DNA of 64,000 bases. It comes from Mytilus californianus. Its lineage: Eukaryota. This document shows positions 3,525 to 58,299 of the stretch, in pieces (positions within the stretch are counted from its first letter, which is position 1; each line of letters opens with the position of its first letter). The position numbers and the translations under genes were made by a program. The notes below the pieces were generated by a model. The model made no database searches. It saw only the letters and a list, made by a program, of their open reading frames with translations, and was not told the DNA's origin. The stretch is taken from NCBI RefSeq assembly GCF_021869535.1, contig NW_026262581.1, forward strand, positions 125,550,001 through 125,614,000. The letters run 5' to 3'.

Positions 3525-3829
3525 GTTTAACCCCGCCACATTCTTTATGTGCCTGTCCCAAGTCAGGAGCCTGTAGTTCAGTGGTTGTCGTTGTTTCATG
3601 TCTACCATATTTGTTTTTCGTTAATTCATTTGTTATAAATTAGGCTGTTTGTTTTCTCAATTGAATTGTTTCATATTTTTCATGTCGGGGCCTTTTATAG
3701 CCGACTATACGGTATGGGTTTTTCTCATTGTTGAAGGCCGTACGGTTGCCTATAATTGCTTACATCCATTTTATTTAAACTTTCATGGATAGTTGTCTCA
3801 TTGGCAATCATACCACATCTCCTTATTTT
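3525..3829 (+). mobile_element. Abundant SINE-like retroposon, family A (3' end ...GTTGTCTCATTGGCAATCATACCACATCT + T-rich tail)
   Basis: Related copies or fragments at about 10582-10754 (+), 18003-18115 (-), 27834-27965 (+), 34370-34620 (+), 34743-34910 (-), 58065-58290 (-), 59280-59440 (-) and 61070-61310 (+). Boundaries approximate. Confidence 0.75.
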
Positions 3830-5536
3830 GTTTAATAAAACTCTATACCAACAGTATATAACAAACGATAAAATGTGGGTATAATTACGACAATACTACA
3901 ACGCCAAACAAGGCAGTCAGCTCAAAGAACGCAATCTACTGATAAAAAATATATGCCTAATATTGGCCGTTGTACTTCCGATACGATTTTATACAGCAAC
4001 ATCATGAACAGTACAGAAAGAAAATATGTGCTACTTACCCACAACAAAAGATTTGAAAAATTGTTGTTCTACTTGTTTCCTTGTTTACAATCAAACGGTG
4101 TGAAATTTCCCTAAAATTTAGAAAGTAACAAGACCATGCATCCCTGTTGTCAACATTCATTTATTAATGAAGATATTCATTTCCGTCACTAAAATATCTA
4201 CAATATATTAGAACGCTATCTGTGAGTATTTAATCTTCGTTTCTTAGTCATTTTAAAGAAAACCTAAGATGGTTCTCGAGTCGGTCGAAAGAACACGACC
4301 AAATGCATACTTTTATGTCCACAAATTGTTTTATGTTAATGATTCTTTTTGTAGATAGCATGTTACTGTGAGAATAAAGTCATAAACATAGCTAATGCTA
4401 TCGTCCTCTGTATCATCCTCATATATCATATAATTGCTCTCTATGCTGTGACGAAAAATAGGAAAAAGTTCCGAAGAGCTTGGTTTGTAACTGAGGTATG
4501 TAGATTTTCAGATAGATTGAACACTTAATAAAGACTTCTTTTTTATGTGTTAATGAACTCGACACAATATTTGTCCAACCTAAATCTGTCTTCAATACCA
4601 GACATTTTAATCTAACTAAACAGTTAACACAAAAATGAAGAATATAAGTTATGAAAAACATTTCGTTTTTCCAAAAATTTGTCTTTGCTAGAAATTGCGT
4701 CTGTCTCTAGAAACACGGTTGTCCTCGTGTATTTGATGCTTGAACATGACTGACGGCAAAAATTACCAAGTAGTTATTCTTTTTTTCGTTAGAAATAGAA
4801 GGCCAGTGATCTGCAAAACGATCTCTCCTATGTCTGTTTTTTTCTGCAGTGTTAACACGGTCACTACGTTTGCATATGACAACACATATACAAATGTTGG
4901 AGTGAAGACAGTTTCACCGTTACTGAAAGTTTAATCATTGTCAAATCCTTTGACTAAAGCAGTTTCTTCTGTGTTGCATCTAAACCCTTTTCAGCGTCTA
5001 GTTCCCCTAGAGATAGCTTTAATTTGCCATACGATAACCGTTAACAAAATGTTGTGGACCGATTTGGAATATGTTTGTAGTTTTTAGGGGGTATATCGCT
5101 TTCAAACATACTGGTTTATTTTTATCAATAGTACCGCTTAAGTCGACGCTAGGGGCCGTCCTGACCTTATTGTAGGGTATGAACGATTCGTTCATTGTTG
5201 AAGACCCTACATCAACTGTCAAGATGAAGAACAGGAATAAAAGCCCTGTTCATTGATAATTTTTTATTTTTTCTAAGTGTTGTGTGCGATTTTGTCCCAT
5301 GAACATTTACTCCATACCCTTTTATTTTCTATAATACATTTCAATTAAATATTTGTTAATACTATATTTTCAGACATCGGTAGCGAAGTACATGCGATAA
5401 CAAAATTGTTTTCGTTGATGTTTTTAATTTATATCGCCAATGCTTTAGGCTTACTTTTGTTTCAGACGTCAGCAGAGAAATACATGGGATTACAAAACTA
5501 TTTCGTGGACGTGTCTATAGACAATGCTCTAGAACT

Positions 5537-6427
5537 TCATTTTGTGAACAATGGCCAAAGACAGAAAATTATTACAATGTTGTCTAACAAACAAGGTAAT
5601 GTACTATTAATATAAAAATAAAAAGATGTGGTATGATTGCCAATGAGACAACTATCCACCAGAGACCAAGGAGATGTGGTATGATTGCCAATGAGACAAC
5701 TATCCACCAGAGACCAAGGAGATGTAGTATGATTGCCTATGAGACAACTATCCACTAGAGACCAAGGAGATGTGGTATGATTGCCAATGAGACAACTATC
5801 CACTAGAGACCAAGGAGATGTGGTATGATTGCCAATGAGACAACTATCCACTAGAGACCAAGGAGATGTGGTATGATTGCCAATGAGACAACTATCCACT
5901 AGAGACCAAGGAGATGTGGTATGATTGCCAATGAGACAACTATCCACTAGAGACCAAGGAGATGTGGTATGATTGCCAATGAGACAACTATCCACTAGAG
6001 ACCAAGGAGATGTGGTATGATTGCCAATGAGACAACTATCCACTAGAGACCATGGAGATGTGGTATGATTGCCAATGAGACAACTATCCACTAGAGACCA
6101 AGGAGATGTGGTATGATTGCCAATGAGACAACTATCCACCAGAGACCAAGGAGATGTGGTATGATTGCCAATGAGACAACTATCCACTAGAGACCAAGGA
6201 GATGTGGTGTGATTGCCAATGAGACAACTATCCACTAGAGACCAAGGAGATGTGGTATGATTGCCTATGAGACAACTATCCACTAGAGACCAAGGAGATG
6301 TGGTATGATTGCCAATGAGACAACTATCCACCAGAGACCAAGGAGATGTGGTATGATTGCCAATGAGACAACTATCCACCAGAGACCAATTGACATAGAT
6401 GTTAGCAACGTTCATGCCAGTTGTCAT
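5537..6427 (-). CDS. Candidate 296-aa repeat protein, (WSLVDSCLIGNHTTSP)x16 with a hydrophobic C-terminal tail; expression unproven
   Basis: True ATG at 6427 with a second in-frame ATG. This is the only one of six frames open across the array, and all unit variants are synonymous in it. Confidence 0.3.
   Translation of the reverse strand: MTTGMNVANIYVNWSLVDSCLIGNHTTSPWSLVDSCLIGNHTTSPWSLVDSCLIGNHTTSPWSLVDSCLIGNHTTSPWSLVDSCLIGNHTTSPWSLVDSCLIGNHTTSPWSLVDSCLIGNHTTSPWSLVDSCLIGNHTTSPWSLVDSCLIGNHTTSPWSLVDSCLIGNHTTSPWSLVDSCLIGNHTTSPWSLVDSCLIGNHTTSPWSLVDSCLIGNHTTSPWSLVDSCLIGNHTTSPWSLVDSCLIGNHTTSPWSLVDSCLIGNHTTSFYFYINSTLPCLLDNIVIIFCLWPLFTK
5624..6389. repeat. 16 tandem copies of a 48-bp unit derived from the family A 3' end
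   Basis: Unit AGATGTGGTATGATTGCCAATGAGACAACTATCCACYAGAGACCAAGG starts at 5624 and recurs every 48 bp; copy 16 starts at 6344. Only five positions in the unit vary. Confidence 0.97.
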
Positions 6428-9230
6428 TGGTTTTGAAGCGATTGTTATTTCATTCTAATGACTCAGTATGAAAATATAACAGATTCTTGTCCAAACGGTT
6501 TCTTATAAAAGGCAATGCATAGTCAAAATGGTTTTTATGTAAATGATATTTGAAGCTTGAAGTGTTTGCTTTTGAACTGTAAAATGTCAGTCCCCAAAAG
6601 ATTGACATACTTTTACAGTTTCTAGTACATTAGTGGTCAACCTCCCAACTTCCATGTATCATTCAAAGTATACAAGAGCCATTTTCATATGTTTTTCTTT
6701 TGAATGATATTGCCAACAGTGGTAACAAAACAGGCACACATTACCACATTTCAGTATCTGAAATGGTTACCTATCATCTAAATAGCGGTACTCGTAGTCG
6801 GTGCTATTTCAATTTGTCAGATATTAAGAGCATAGTTCTTACAGATTGTGACTACACGTGTAAGAACCCTCCTCTTTGCAAATATGTCAGTAATACGTTA
6901 GTTTTTATCCATATTTTGCTTAGAAAAGGACATATGGAGCATCCGCCTTCTTATTGATGTAAGCGATTTTCTCCTATTTTTGTTTAAAAATTAAGAATGG
7001 GTTCGCCTTGAAAAGTTGCTTTTGAAGATTTCGAGTTTTTTTGTGTTGTCGCAAAGGAGCACTTATATAGACATTATAATATTAAATGAACGTCAATGAA
7101 AGAAAAAAAAAATACAATATAGTTTAAGTGTTAAAATGAATTAATATTCCTTGATAACATTTACGATGAGATAACTGGCGAGTCGAGAACAAAAGAAAAG
7201 TAACTCTTCAAGTACGACTAACGTCAATATTCATTAATGAAATCAGATGTTGCATGGTTAATGAGACAGCAACCCAACGACACAACTAACCAATAGATAT
7301 CTAGTCTCACTAAGAGGTCAACATACAGTTTTCAACAATTGACTTTTATCTACCATCTGTTTAAGCTTTGGTAACCACATTAGTTTAAAATGATTTCAAA
7401 ACCACAATTACAATTTTTAAATTAAAAAGCGTTATTTGAAATACAGATACCACTGCATATTTTCCTTTTATATCTATCGAGGAGATTTTATTAAATAACT
7501 TGTTACACTGATTTATTTAACATATGTTAATCCTCGTTGTATCCATACATCAATTTTTATGGTGTTACTGGTAGTCCTTATCACCATTCTACAAATTTCC
7601 AACAACTAAGTTTTTAAGCACATCGGTTCACTCGTCATCGCAGTATCCTTCAATATAAAACAAATCGACTTGTGTTCATATAAAGATTTAAAAATTATGT
7701 CTTTTTCATCTAGAAAAAAAAGAGTATCCATTGAAAGATTTTGACTGTATTTTGAACAGTCAGAAATATGTATGACAGTTGTTTTCCATTCGTTTAATGT
7801 ATTTGAGCTTTTGATTTTGCAATTTGATAAGGGACTTTCCATTTTGAATTTTCCTTGGAGTTCGGTATTTTTATTTTTTTACTTTTGAACATCTGTGAGA
7901 CCAATCAATTATTGTACTGTATTTTTTTCAGTGCGCAGTATGCTGCTAATGTTATGTACGAAATCCTACTGGAGAAGCCGAGTTGTAGACCCAATCATAT
8001 GCTTGTCTGTGACGTCATGTATATGTTTAATTGGAATGTTTGTACAAATTATTACATTGAGAGTTTTGGGAACGTAGCTTGACTTGAGTTCGCTATAGAT
8101 TATAAACCAATACTGAGTAATAAATTTCATGCAGAACTGAAATATATATACAAGGCTTAAACCAACAAAAACTCTGTCATCACCTTTGTGATCGATACAA
8201 ATATTGCATGGCCTTTGACACTTGCATGATCTGGTATGCTTCATTTTACATTATTTATTTTTGTAAACGAATTGATACACTGGTTTCAAATGTCAAATGA
8301 TATTTGTAACTTTATTTAGTAACGTTAATATGTTGAAATTACAGAATGATATTTGCTAGAATAGAAATGCACATATTTGTTCACTTGATAGTCAACAAAC
8401 AACTTGATGTCCGTTTAACACAAAGTTTATTCTGTGCAGTATTATATTTCTCCAGAACTGGTTAATAATTGTATAGTGGTAGTGTATCGAAGAACCACTG
8501 ACAGTATAATATTGGTCAAACGCAAATCAATTAATATGAAGTGTTTAGAATTCTGAAATAAAACGCCCAAAACAATCTTGCCAAATTTTACCGGTGTTTC
8601 AAATTATTTACCATTCAGCTAGCATCATCTGCCTTTTTTTATGTTTAAAGTATAACTTAACATTTTAGGAGTATTATATGATGTTAATCACACTATGTTT
8701 GATTGTAGCTATTATTATGCCAAGCATACTTTTGTAATTTAACCTGTATATAATGGTTGTAATCTGTATGTAAGGATGACTAGACTATTTAACGTCCAGT
8801 GGCACATATTGTATACTTATTAAGAACGAGAAGATGTTATAAACTTTCGTGGTACTTGACCTAAAGCCTTAGTCGTGTTTTACGTACTAGTTCACTAGGT
8901 TAGATCAGGTTATAGTTCACAGCCCTTCGAATTCGTGCATTCAAGGCACTTATACAACAATACCATCGAGGTGATTCAATACATAAGTTTAGGAAACTTG
9001 TGTCTGATCCTTTTTGAGCAAGTAAAGTCAATTATCTTTATGGTGATTTTACTTGATGTTGTCCGATATTGAGGGAAATTTGGATTTTGCCATTTGATAA
9101 AGGACTTTCCGTTTTGAATTTTCCTTGGAGTTCGGTATTTTTGTTATTTTACTTTTTATTTTGGTACGTGATTCGGTTTCATTCAGTTTAACTTGGCACT
9201 TTATTTGGCATATTAACTTTTTTGATTCGA

Positions 9231-27833: not shown

Positions 27834-27965
27834 GCCGACCATACGGTATGTGTTTTTCTCATTGTTGAAGGCCGTACGGTTGCCTATAATTACTTACATC
27901 CACTTCATTTGAACTTTGGTGGATAGTTGTCTCATTGGCAATCATACCACATCTCCTTACTTTTA
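27834..27965 (+). mobile_element. 5'-truncated family A retroposon with 6-bp TSD
   Basis: TSD TATATT at 27828-27833 and 27966-27971. Removing the insert restores the LINE peptide INGNI-LWSKL. Confidence 0.85.
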
Positions 27966-33986: not shown

Positions 33987-35141
33987 GATAAATTAAAACA
34001 TAACGAAATATGTATGGCTATGCGTTTATGAAAATTTTTGATCCTACATCTTGTCCATACGTATGTTGGCAATGCATAATGTTATGCTTTTCTCAGGCAT
34101 TTTTTGACGTCTTTACACACAATATATTGGATGTTTAGTGTTTAATTTTGAAGTCCAGGGAAAGCATGATTTCTTTATAACCAGTTTGAATTGGTTTTCA
34201 ACTAGTTAGTTACAGTACATTTACAGTAAGTTTATTCAAAACTTTCAAATTTATTACTATAAGATCCATACCTTGTATCTTGTATTTGTGTCTTTTTATA
34301 AGGATTTTTATCTGTGCTTGAGTGCTCACAAACATGTTTTACATTGCCTCATTGTTTATTCGACTGTCATAAGTCCGGAGCATGCAATTCAGTGGTTGGT
34401 TTCTCTCTGAACTATTTGTTTCTTGTTTATTTGTTTTTTTGCTTATATCAGGCTGTTGGTTTTCTGTTTTGAATTGTTTCACATTATGTCATGCAGGGTC
34501 CTTTTATAGCTGACTAAGCGGTATGGGGTTTGGGTTTGTTAATTGTTGGAGGCCTTACGATAACCGTTTCTGGTGGAAAGTTGATATTGTCAATCATACT
34601 ATATCTCCATATGTTTATGCATGTCAATAATTTGCATAGATTTCAGATGAACCCGTTTTCATAATAGAAACAAAATAAGGTTTATTATATTATAAACCTG
34701 TACAAAATATAGGTATACAAAACTCCTTAATATATTAGTACATATAAAAATAAGGAGATGTGATATGATTGCCAATGAGACAACTATCCACCAAAGTTCA
34801 AATGAAGTGGATGTAAGCAATTATTGGCAACCGTATGGCCTTCAACAATGAGAGAATACCATATCGGATAGTCGGCTATAAAAAGCCCCGACATGAAAAA
34901 TATGAAACCATGACGGTGGTGTTACAGCACAACATAAGAACAAACTCTAAAAATCAGTGGCAATTGGCTTAACTCAAAAGATCGATACGAGAAAAAAACA
35001 ACAGACACAAAGCATCGAAATAAGAACAGTTACTGAAAGTTAGTTCAATTTAAAAATTCAGCTTTAATATGAAATATTTTATTCAAATTAAAAATAGTTT
35101 CACCTATGGTTATCAAATACATGTAAATTGTCTCTTTACAG

Positions 35142-56393: not shown

Positions 56394-58299
56394 ACACAAT
56401 TTTAAGCCTGGTATCTATGGTGTGGTTATGTACAATAAAAATCGAGTTAACTCGAATACAGGAAGCCGACCCTGGCTGCTTCGCATCTTCGTCCTATTTA
56501 TCACGGAACACTTATGAGGGAAATGAATGTCTGGTGAACTGCCTATTCTTTTGTGGAGTTCGTGATGCTGAAACTTCTCACATTTAGCTGTGTTAGCTTC
56601 TCCACTTCGACCTAGGACTTTTTTGTAATGCACCACCGTGTTTCGAAAACGACAAGATTTTTCCATTAATCTAGGTAAAGGATCTATATATTCAATGATT
56701 CAATATAAATCATGATACGGTTTCCAGGAGAACAAAATTCAAATGGACCGAAGGCCAATGACCGATATCCGTAATAAGAAATAATTATTATTTCTCCCGT
56801 GAATGCGTCTGGGAAAACAACAGCCAAAATTAAATATCTGTAAAAAAGAAGAAAAACCCAGTAAGAATTTTTCTTACATACCTATTAAGATATAATATAA
56901 TATCGTGAGATAAATGGTTTCTTGTGAATTGAAAGGAGTCCCACATTTCTCTGACTTCAAACGGGCTCTGGGTAAAGACTATTTATCAAAAACTGCTGTC
57001 GGACGTCAGGGCAATCTCGGACAAGTATATTTTTGCAAAATTGAGAAGAAAATCGTTTATAGGTCATGGTTTTCGGTACCGGTCTTCGAGGGTTTGTTTG
57101 TTTGAATTTGTTCGTCGAATGTCAGAGTATTCTCGGCTTGATATAAGGGACTAACATACAAAAAGTAACTTTTGGGCAAGTTGGATCTAGGTTCAACTTT
57201 CCACTCAATTCTTCACAAAATATGATACAAAGGTTCCTTCAACAGGTATGCTGTAGTACTGTATTATGCACGATACTTATCTTCCTGTACGAGACCAACA
57301 GGGATCCGTTGTATACCGCGCCCACGTTCGTCTTTTATAAAATGCACACTATCAACCTTCACAAGCCAATTTAATTAATATATAGATCTTTGATTTCGTT
57401 ATACTTTGACGAGTAAGAGAGTTACGATATATCTGAATATTAATCAGATTGTAGACAAACTCTTTGTTGGTTGATTTCTAATACTAGTTGTATTTTGGTA
57501 CGATTTTTTTATTTGAAAATATTAAAAGAGAAAAATAACAACAAGTAAAGCACGTCACATCTTTCCTTTTCTACGTGTAGGACTTGGCCCTTTTCTTGCG
57601 TCTGAAAAGTTAAAAAAAAAATGTATATCACTTAACAAAGACAACACATATGCAATTATTATGTAAGAGAGGCTATAAAATATATGGAAATGTTTACACA
57701 TATTCATTACGGTGAAGTTTTTACCATTCGAATTCATCAAGTATCAATTAGTTGATAACGAACAGATTATCAATAGTTATTGGCCAATCCAATAACAATA
57801 ATGGTGTGTTGAAAATTTCTTTGAACATTTTTGCACTAGCAAAAAACATATCTGATCTTTAATAAGACCAAATTTAAAAACTTCAAAAATCTCGTTTTGA
57901 CATCTTCTTATTAACAGTTACAATGTAGGTACATTGGCATCACGGCTTCAACGAGCACGATACAGGATGCTTAATTGAAAGATACTTTGATTAAAATATG
58001 ACTTTTTTGTAAGTTTATGTGTTCATAATTGTTATTTTAATCTCAATGTATGCATAATAAAAACCAATATAAAAAAAGATGTGGTATGATTGTCAATGAG
58101 ACAACTATTCACCAGCGACCAACTAACGAAGATGCAAACAACTATAGATTTCCGTATGGCCTTCGCCAATAACAAAAACCCATGATACCGTATAGTTATG
58201 TAAAAGACCTTAACATGAAATAATGTAAAAGAATTCATACGAGGTACCAACGGTCTGACTTATGTACAAAATCGAAAAAAGAACGAAAATTATATGTGT

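What the first reader, a model, noticed from the sequence alone, without database searches (positions are those of the whole stretch)
5537..6427. SINE-tail-derived 16 x 48-bp array whose every variant is synonymous in its single open frame
Seen: only five unit positions vary (7, 10, 19, 37, 46), all in the same codon phase. On the minus strand they are ACC>ACT, CAT>CAC, ATT>ATA, CTG/CTA and CCT>CCA, all silent, so all 16 copies encode the same peptide, WSLVDSCLIGNHTTS(P). The other five frames hit stops. By hand count, 35 of 144 possible substitutions in the unit are synonymous, so five of five is about 1 in 1000 for this frame and about 1 in 200 allowing for six frames. The frame has an ATG start, an N-H-T glycosylation sequon plus one Cys, Trp and His per unit, and a hydrophobic tail (LLDNIVIIFCLWPLF). 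Inference: a young repeat protein exapted from a retroposon 3' end under purifying selection, or an array made by repeated RT template jumping on that 3' end.
Basis: partly seen in the sequence, partly recalled or inferred. Interest (0 to 1): 0.8.

Follow-up and report, generated by a model that had tools for sequence, protein, structure and literature searches.

The report
Retroposon-tail minisatellite with accidental open frame
This is an ordinary non-coding minisatellite that grew out of the last 48 bases of a very abundant mussel-type jumping element; its long open reading frame and its five "silent" variants are best explained by chance and by variants shared with sister arrays, not by a new protein.

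Summary
Window 5624-6389 holds 15.96 copies of a 48-bp unit. Five unit positions vary, and all are silent third-codon positions of the minus-strand ORF 6427..5537 (296 aa).

The coding interpretation fails on comparison.
- The unit is the 3' end of a roughly 400-bp dispersed element with at least 16,000 tail copies in this 1.65-Gb genome.
- At least 19 other loci carry arrays of the same tail, with periods of 39, 48, 49, 50, 52 and 53 bp. Most of these periods cannot keep a frame.
- In eight sister 48-bp arrays with variants, within-array variants in the same frame are 23 nonsynonymous, 2 nonsense and 10 silent, which is the neutral ratio.
- Four of the window's five variants recur as the same base change in an array on another chromosome that also carries TGA stops, so they are not independent events at this locus.
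- Among dispersed copies, the would-be wobble positions are the least variable class.
- 98% of shuffled 48-mers give an open frame when tiled in tandem.
- No Pfam family or protein relative was found.

RNA evidence could not be obtained. Verdict: a TE-derived minisatellite, a known kind, of low interest.

The parts
5624..6389 (-). 48-bp x 15.96 tandem array. In element orientation (minus strand) the unit is CCTTGGTCTCTAGTGGATAGTTGTCTCATTGGCAATCATACCACATCT.
   Evidence: TRF; unit table.
6390..6409 (-). Remnant of the parent element's body just upstream of the repeated segment (GTTGCTAACATCTATGTCAA in element orientation). The element is 5'-truncated here.
   Evidence: Alignment to dispersed copies; flank comparison; own-genome matches extend to query position 873.
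5606..5623 (-). A/T-rich 3' tail of the parent element (…TTTTATTTTTATAT in element orientation), following the last unit.
   Evidence: The same tail follows every dispersed copy and every sister array.
5537..6427 (-). 296-aa ORF running through the array. The ATG (6427-6425) and the last 30 codons (5626-5537) lie in locus-specific, non-repeat sequence.
   Evidence: Flanks 5350-5610 and 6410-7100 are unique in the genome. No Pfam family above cut-off and no protein relative.
27919..27943 (+). Tail core of a dispersed single copy of the parent element (element on the + strand, about 134 bp retained).
3785..3809 (+). Tail core of another dispersed copy of the parent element (about 311 bp retained).
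34767..34791 (-). Tail core of another dispersed copy (internally deleted variant).
58088..58112 (-). Tail core of a more diverged dispersed copy.

Best explanation
The stretch is a non-coding minisatellite seeded in the 3' end of one 5'-truncated copy of a very abundant, roughly 400-bp retroposon-like interspersed element. Earlier notes of this scan call the genome a mussel; I did not verify that. A duplication joined the element's tail (…CATCTCC-TT) to a point 48 bp upstream (TT-GGTCTC…) at a 2-bp microhomology. The array then grew and was homogenised by unequal exchange or replication slippage; this step is inferred. The unit happens to lack stops in one frame, so 16 copies plus chance ATG and TGA codons in the unique flanks give a 296-codon ORF. 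The five variants are all silent by coincidence, and the coincidence is inflated by non-independence. Four of them are the same base changes seen in a sister array on another chromosome, so they were either inherited from a common array-bearing source or arose at recurrent sites. They were not filtered by selection on this ORF.
For: (1) The unit is the tail of a dispersed family: 16,137 genome matches to the 46-mer at up to 3 mismatches, 5-6 solo copies in the window, and copies with a common 3' end and variable 5' truncation from 134 to over 400 bp. (2) The tail has expanded recurrently: at least 19 separate arrays with periods 39, 48, 49, 50, 52 and 53 bp and at least 5 junction types, plus 168 junctions of the 48-bp type in roughly 16 arrays. 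(3) In eight sister 48-bp arrays with variants, within-array variants in the homologous frame are 23 nonsynonymous, 2 nonsense (TGG>TGA) and 10 silent, i.e. 29% silent against 24-29% expected. L002 keeps the frame open over 22 units with 4 of 4 variants nonsynonymous. (4) Four of the five window variants recur in L004 (C99:114.15 Mb), hypergeometric p = 6e-5, and two recur in L007. 19T occurs in arrays of period 48, 49, 50 and 53, and 37C/T in periods 48, 50 and 52. Pooling L001, L004 and L007 gives 7 silent of 18 variant types, not different from neutral (p = 0.12-0.25). (5) Among dispersed copies, 1,886 differ from the 33-mer consensus only at would-be codon position 3, against 2,822 at position 2 and 2,951 at position 1, so there is no wobble excess. 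(6) 98% of shuffled 48-mers have at least one open frame when tiled. (7) Pfam gives only a sub-threshold 14-residue hit, and the word-based protein search gives nothing at E<=0.001. (8) The same anatomy is described for SINE-derived satellites: tandem units with a longer terminal unit running to the element's terminus, many loci, many independent variants (PMC10702118). TE-derived minisatellites are common (PMC9659126).
Against: Taken alone, five of five silent is a nominal p of about 0.001-0.002, and this array is the cleanest of those examined. No expression data could be obtained, so transcription or translation of the ORF is not excluded directly. The four shared variants are themselves all silent, which moves part of the coincidence back to a common ancestor rather than removing it. 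Only about 12 arrays of the 48-bp type could be read. Raw reads were not checked.
Confidence: 0.87

Rival explanations
1. The ORF is a young, real protein-coding gene (a 16-repeat Cys/Trp/His/N-glycosylated protein) exapted from the retroposon tail and held by purifying selection.
For: The ORF is intact with an ATG and a stop. All five variants are silent, with nominal p about 0.001-0.002. The flanks holding the start and stop are unique sequence.
Against: Sister arrays evolve neutrally in the same frame and carry stops. Four of five variants are shared with an array on another chromosome and so did not arise under selection on this ORF. The family shows no wobble excess. An open frame is expected by chance. 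No Pfam family or protein relative was found. There is no signal peptide-like N-terminus for a supposedly glycosylated protein (direct reading). With dozens of arrays in this family and 2,481 notes on this genome alone, a 1-in-500 to 1-in-1000 event is expected.
Confidence: 0.03
2. The array was not grown in place. It was made during retrotransposition, by reverse transcriptase repeatedly switching back to the 3' end of the template, or was copied from an array-bearing master element, and it arrived at this locus essentially as it is.
For: The identical 48-bp junction occurs in roughly 16 separate arrays. Most array-bearing copies keep only about 20-35 bp of element body upstream of the array, far less than solo copies. 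L001, L004 and L007 share unit variants across loci. The unit RNA folds into a modest hairpin (-11.7 kcal/mol, z = -1.8), of the kind LINE reverse transcriptases recognise in stringent-type tails (general knowledge, not tested here).
Against: Each array has private substitutions fixed in all or most of its units (for example C23 in all 34 units of L004 and CA at positions 4-5 in all 9 units of L025). That pattern needs local expansion or homogenisation, or else a differently mutated source for each array. No target-site duplication was found around this copy. The arrays are clustered on two chromosome stretches, which fits region-specific recombination better than random retrotransposition. 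This rival concerns origin only; the array is still non-coding under it.
Confidence: 0.3
3. The variant pattern reflects real constraint, but on nucleic-acid structure (the tail hairpin) rather than on a protein.
For: In the predicted hairpin, three of the five variants fall in unpaired positions and one (C42>U in element orientation) changes G-C to G-U. Only the private variant T39>C breaks a pair.
Against: Half of the unit is unpaired, so this distribution is unremarkable. The hairpin z-score is weak (-1.8). Sister arrays carry many stem-breaking variants. There is no reason for internal units of an inserted array to stay under such constraint.
Confidence: 0.04
4. Some or all of the five variants, or the copy number, are assembly artefacts of a collapsed or polished repeat.
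For: Minisatellites are error-prone in assemblies, and raw reads could not be inspected.
Against: Four of the five variants are seen independently in other arrays. The array has no indels and has clean junctions with unique flanks.
Confidence: 0.05

Closest known systems
SINE-derived satellites (sSats) of squamate reptiles (Vassetzky et al. 2023, PMC10702118)
   Same: Tandem repeats made of a portion of a short retroposon, with a longer terminal unit continuing to the element's own terminus. Many loci per genome, several independently arisen unit variants, partial homogenisation within loci, and non-random chromosomal clustering.
   Different: Here the unit is short (48 bp, minisatellite range) and comes from the extreme 3' tail. 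The host is an invertebrate. The parent has no demonstrable Pol III head.
Alu- and other TE-derived minisatellites in human (Jurka & Gentles 2006; Ahmed & Liang 2012, as cited in PMC9659126)
   Same: Minisatellites seeded inside, and often near the 3' end of, abundant non-autonomous retroposons. They are a frequent, non-coding by-product of element abundance.
   Different: Different element family and host. Here one tail has produced at least five junction types and dozens of arrays.
[quoted passage not shown]
   Same: Bivalve retroposons forming direct tandem structures, including inside introns. The authors note that tandem repeats made of fragmented SINE parts were likely missed and need targeted screening.
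   Different: That paper describes multimers of whole or near-whole HCD-tRNA SINEs (2-15 elements). The array here repeats only a 48-bp tail segment of an element without a recognisable tRNA head.
De novo or TE-exapted tandem-repeat proteins
   Same: A long ORF made of identical peptide repeats derived from TE sequence.
   Different: No evidence of expression, homologues or selective constraint. Sister copies are neutral and interrupted.

Membership tests
TE-derived minisatellite / SINE-derived satellite-like array | Head-to-tail units homologous to part of a dispersed element | tested here: met
   48-bp x 16 array. The unit matches the tail of solo copies in the window and 16,137 genome sites.
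TE-derived minisatellite / SINE-derived satellite-like array | Terminal units continue into the element's own flanking sequence and terminus | tested here: met
   The body remnant at 6390-6409 and the A/T tail at 5606-5623 align with solo copies.
TE-derived minisatellite / SINE-derived satellite-like array | Multiple loci, with independent unit variants from the same element region | tested here: met
   At least 19 arrays, with periods from 39 to 53 bp and at least 5 junction types.
SINE (strict sense) | Pol III-type head derived from tRNA, 5S or 7SL RNA | tested here: not met
   ARAGORN and Rfam at gathering threshold find nothing in the window, which holds 5-6 copies. The full-length heads aligned show no recognised tRNA-like segment. 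A degenerate head cannot be excluded.
LINE-mobilised non-autonomous retroposon | Common 3' end with variable 5' truncation | tested here: met
   Copies retain 134, 165, 173, 230, 311 or more than 400 bp upstream of the same 3' end.
LINE-mobilised non-autonomous retroposon | Partner LINE with the same 3' tail; target-site duplications | tested here: inconclusive
   No target-site duplication of 8 bp or more around this copy.
Protein-coding gene (tandem-repeat protein) | Excess of synonymous over nonsynonymous change in homologous copies | tested here: not met
   This array is 5/5 silent. Sister arrays are 10 silent, 23 nonsynonymous and 2 stop. The pooled clade gives 7 of 18 silent, not significant. 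Dispersed copies are least variable at would-be wobble sites.
Protein-coding gene (tandem-repeat protein) | Homologous proteins or known domains | tested here: not met
   Pfam gives only DUF6993 at 17.6 bits, below the cut-off of 25, over 14 residues. The word-based search scored 7,013 candidates and none reached E<=0.001. That search sees only proteins of 0.55-1.75 times the query length.
Protein-coding gene (tandem-repeat protein) | Transcription and translation of the ORF strand | not testable with these tools

The most novel reading that the evidence does not exclude
The 48-bp-tail arrays form a distinct, mobile or regionally spreading sub-family. One junction type is shared by roughly 16 arrays, most of them attached to a nearly body-less (20-35 bp) element remnant. 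They share unit polymorphisms across chromosomes and are concentrated in two roughly 8-Mb chromosome stretches. This would point to a specific generating mechanism, such as reverse-transcriptase template switching at the tail hairpin or recombination-driven spread near chromosome ends. One member (this locus) may have acquired a translatable ORF.
Probability: 0.2. Interest if true: 0.4.

Novelty: new member of a known kind. Interest (0 to 1): 0.12.

Why it matters
The main value is as a caution. A long ORF through a minisatellite whose period is divisible by three, even with only silent variants, is not evidence of a gene until sister arrays of the same unit have been examined. Here those arrays give the locus-specific neutral expectation directly. 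A secondary point is that one retroposon tail has spawned dozens of arrays with several periods, and these arrays are clustered. That makes it a convenient natural series for studying how minisatellites are born from mobile-element ends in bivalve genomes, a question that PMC11481361 says still needs targeted screening.

Tried and rejected
I replaced it with whole-genome pattern counts.
- Literature search for the tail sequence itself: no paper found.
- Rfam at gathering threshold and ARAGORN on the whole window: nothing, so a tRNA-derived head is not supported.
- Pfam hit DUF6993 (E = 0.0039, 17.6 bits against a cut-off of 25, 14 residues): rejected as noise.
- Word-based protein search: no hit. 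I did not run the large representative search, because the verdict does not rest on absence of relatives.
- Target-site duplication around the array-bearing copy: only a 7-bp A/T match, not convincing.
- Family-wide hypervariable sites as the explanation: only partly borne out. 7A, 19T and 37C/T recur among arrays, but in dispersed copies the class holding three of the five positions (7, 10, 19; 37 and 46 lie outside the 33-mer tested) is the least variable.
- Hairpin constraint: weak (z = -1.8) and contradicted by sister arrays.
- + strand exon-like ORF 5406-5615: no paralogue in the genome and no Pfam family. Left open.
- The search of earlier findings by words and by sequence returned nothing relevant.

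Full report
**1. What is there**

Tandem Repeats Finder reports one array at window 5624-6389, with period 48, 16.0 copies, 98% matches and no indels. Cutting it into units shows that only + strand unit positions 7, 10, 19, 37 and 46 vary.

The minus strand carries an ORF from ATG 6427 to TGA 5537, encoding 296 aa. In that frame the five variants are ACC>ACT, CAT>CAC, ATT>ATA, CTA/CTG and CCT>CCA. All are at codon position 3 and all are silent.

The probability of 5/5 silent is 0.0008 with uniform substitution, 0.0015 given three transitions and two transversions, and 0.0019 using the empirical silent fraction of sister arrays.

Two qualifications apply:
- The ancestral form of the unit (C at position 37) is also open on the + strand. 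The derived T37 creates the TAG there.
- 98% of composition-matched shuffled 48-mers have at least one open frame when tiled in tandem, with a mean of about 2.6 of six. An ORF through such an array is therefore expected.

**2. Where the unit comes from**

The 25-mer core of the unit occurs five more times in the window as isolated copies. Aligning those with the two ends of the array shows a dispersed element whose 3' end reads, in element orientation (window minus strand), …GGTGGATAGTTGTCTCATTGGCAATCATACCACATCTCCTTATTTTTATAT.

The array is that tail repeated. Its last unit runs into the A/T tail (5606-5623). Its first unit is preceded by about 20 bp of element body (6390-6409), after which homology stops.

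The family has these properties:
- Full-length copies are about 400 bp. Copies share the 3' end and are truncated at variable 5' positions, retaining 134 to over 400 bp.
- The genome (1.65 Gb, 175 contigs) has 16,137 matches to the 46-mer unit at up to 3 mismatches and 3,366 exact matches to a 33-mer.
- ARAGORN and Rfam find no tRNA-like head in the window.

So 'retroposon-like 3' tail' is supported, and 'SINE' in the strict sense is not. Earlier notes of this scan call the genome a mussel and mention a dense SINE-like family without a tRNA head. I did not verify the organism.

The sequence holding the ORF's ATG and its last 30 codons is unique in the genome.

**3. Sister arrays**

Searching the genome with the finding's 891 bases returns at least 19 other arrays of the same tail at different loci. 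TRF on the fetched loci gives periods of 39, 48, 49, 50, 52 and 53 bp with at least five junction types. Expansion of this tail is therefore a recurrent mutational process, and most products cannot keep a reading frame.

The 48-bp junction itself occurs 168 times, in roughly 16 arrays. Each array has its own far flanks, the same near flanks (element tail and body), and private substitutions fixed in all or most of its units.

**4. Test of purifying selection**

I put the units of eight sister 48-bp arrays with variants into the window's frame and counted within-array variant types. The result was 23 nonsynonymous, 2 nonsense (TGG>TGA, in L004 and L007) and 10 silent. That is 29% silent, matching the neutral expectation of 24-29%.
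- L002 keeps the frame open over 22 units, yet all four of its variants are nonsynonymous.
- Among dispersed copies, the number differing from the 33-mer consensus only at would-be codon position 3 is 1,886, against 2,822 for position 2 and 2,951 for position 1. This is the opposite of a coding signature.

**5. Non-independence of the five variants**

Four of the five are present as the same base change in L004 (C99:114.15 Mb), a 34-unit array that also has stops and five other nonsynonymous variants: CCT>CCA, CTA/CTG, ATT>ATA and ACC>ACT. Two are also in L007, 850 kb away on the same chromosome. Sharing 4 of 5 with L004's ten variant types has a hypergeometric p of 6e-5.
- The C/T polymorphism at position 37 occurs in arrays of period 48, 50 and 52, and 19T occurs in arrays of period 48, 49, 50 and 53.
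- Most of the window's variants were therefore either inherited from a common array-bearing source or arose at recurrent sites. In either case selection on this locus's ORF did not filter them.
- Only CAT>CAC (one unit) is private to this locus.
- Pooling the three related arrays gives 7 silent of 18 variant types, which is not different from neutral (p = 0.12-0.25).
- The variant set shared among these arrays also includes a nonsense change (TGG>TGA in L004 and L007) that the window's array simply lacks.

**6. Protein-level checks**

Pfam gives only a sub-threshold 14-residue hit (DUF6993, 17.6 bits against a cut-off of 25). The word-based search of 5.8 billion protein clusters scored 7,013 candidates, and none reached E<=0.001. 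That search sees only proteins of 0.55-1.75 times the query length. The N-terminus (MTTGMNVANIYVN…) does not look like a signal peptide, which a glycosylated repeat protein would need; this is my reading, not a tool result.

**7. Mechanism**

Shown:
- The array is a repeat of the element's last 48 bp.
- Its junction (…CATCTCC-TT-GGTCTC…) lies at a 2-bp overlap between tail and upstream sequence.
- Other arrays use other junctions.
- Arrays carry private fixed substitutions.

Inferred: a primary duplication followed by unequal exchange or replication slippage with homogenisation. This is the three-step scheme proposed for SINE-derived satellites (PMC10702118).

Whether some arrays were born or spread during retrotransposition stays open. 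Three observations point that way: the identical 48-bp junction in about 16 loci, the very short body remnant (20-35 bp) in most array-bearing copies, and the shared unit variants. Three point the other way: the private fixed substitutions, the lack of a target-site duplication here, and the strong regional clustering (Poisson p about 3e-8). That clustering is five arrays within C1:124.7-133.0 Mb and three within C99:114-122 Mb.

The unit RNA folds into a modest hairpin (-11.7 kcal/mol, z = -1.8). It is not strong enough to carry an argument.

**8. Comparison with known systems**

The anatomy matches SINE-derived satellites of squamates. Those have a longer terminal unit reaching the element's end, many loci, independent variants and a subtelomeric preference. 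It also matches the many TE-derived minisatellites in human. A 2024 bivalve SINE study notes that tandem repeats built from SINE fragments were probably missed and need targeted screening. This locus is therefore a new member of a known kind.

**9. What could not be done**

**10. Verdict**

The retroposon-tail origin is supported. The protein and purifying-selection reading is not supported: my estimate is about 3%, against about 87% for a non-coding minisatellite with a coincidental silent pattern. Interest is low.

Noticed in passing
G000 C1:124.7-133.0 Mb and C99:114-122 Mb (this window is C1:125.55 Mb): Arrays with the 48-bp junction are strongly clustered. Five of about 16 lie in one 8.3-Mb stretch of C1 and three in an 8-Mb stretch of C99. 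Many other-period arrays lie within 10 Mb of contig starts. This may reflect a chromosome-end preference, as reported for SINE-derived satellites, but contig lengths are unknown to me.
   Followed up: partly
window 5150-5335: A separate, very abundant repeat of about 183 bp. Copies are 91-95% identical, and the first look found 1,477 candidate places. It ends about 290 bp from the array. It was not classified.
   Followed up: no
window 5406-5615 (+): A 69-aa + strand ORF with exon-like borders (tttcag|ACG near 5466, CAAG|gtaatg at 5594/5595). It lies antisense to the 'hydrophobic tail' of the minus ORF. A diverged 92-bp copy of its start sits just upstream (about 5370-5460). It is unique in the genome and has no Pfam family. 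If it is a real exon, the array is intronic on the + strand.
   Followed up: partly
L010:1866-1964 and 2277-2393 (G000 C1:131.67 Mb): A nested 19-bp micro-array (CCAATGAGACAACTCTCCA, 5-6 copies) sits inside a 48-bp array of the same tail, so the tail core itself slips at a second scale.
   Followed up: no
genome-wide, 33-mer of the tail: Variation among dispersed copies is unequal across the three phase classes: 1,886, 2,822 and 2,951 copies (chi-square p about 3e-58). Subfamily-diagnostic positions (for example unit positions 6, 8, 9, 17, 18, 24) probably drive this, rather than any periodic constraint.
   Followed up: partly
L009:1202-1502 (G000 C86:9.175 Mb): Next to a 49-bp tail array there is a 103-bp-period repeat (2.9 copies) made of the tail plus adjacent non-element sequence. 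Larger units that include flank can therefore also be amplified.
   Followed up: no
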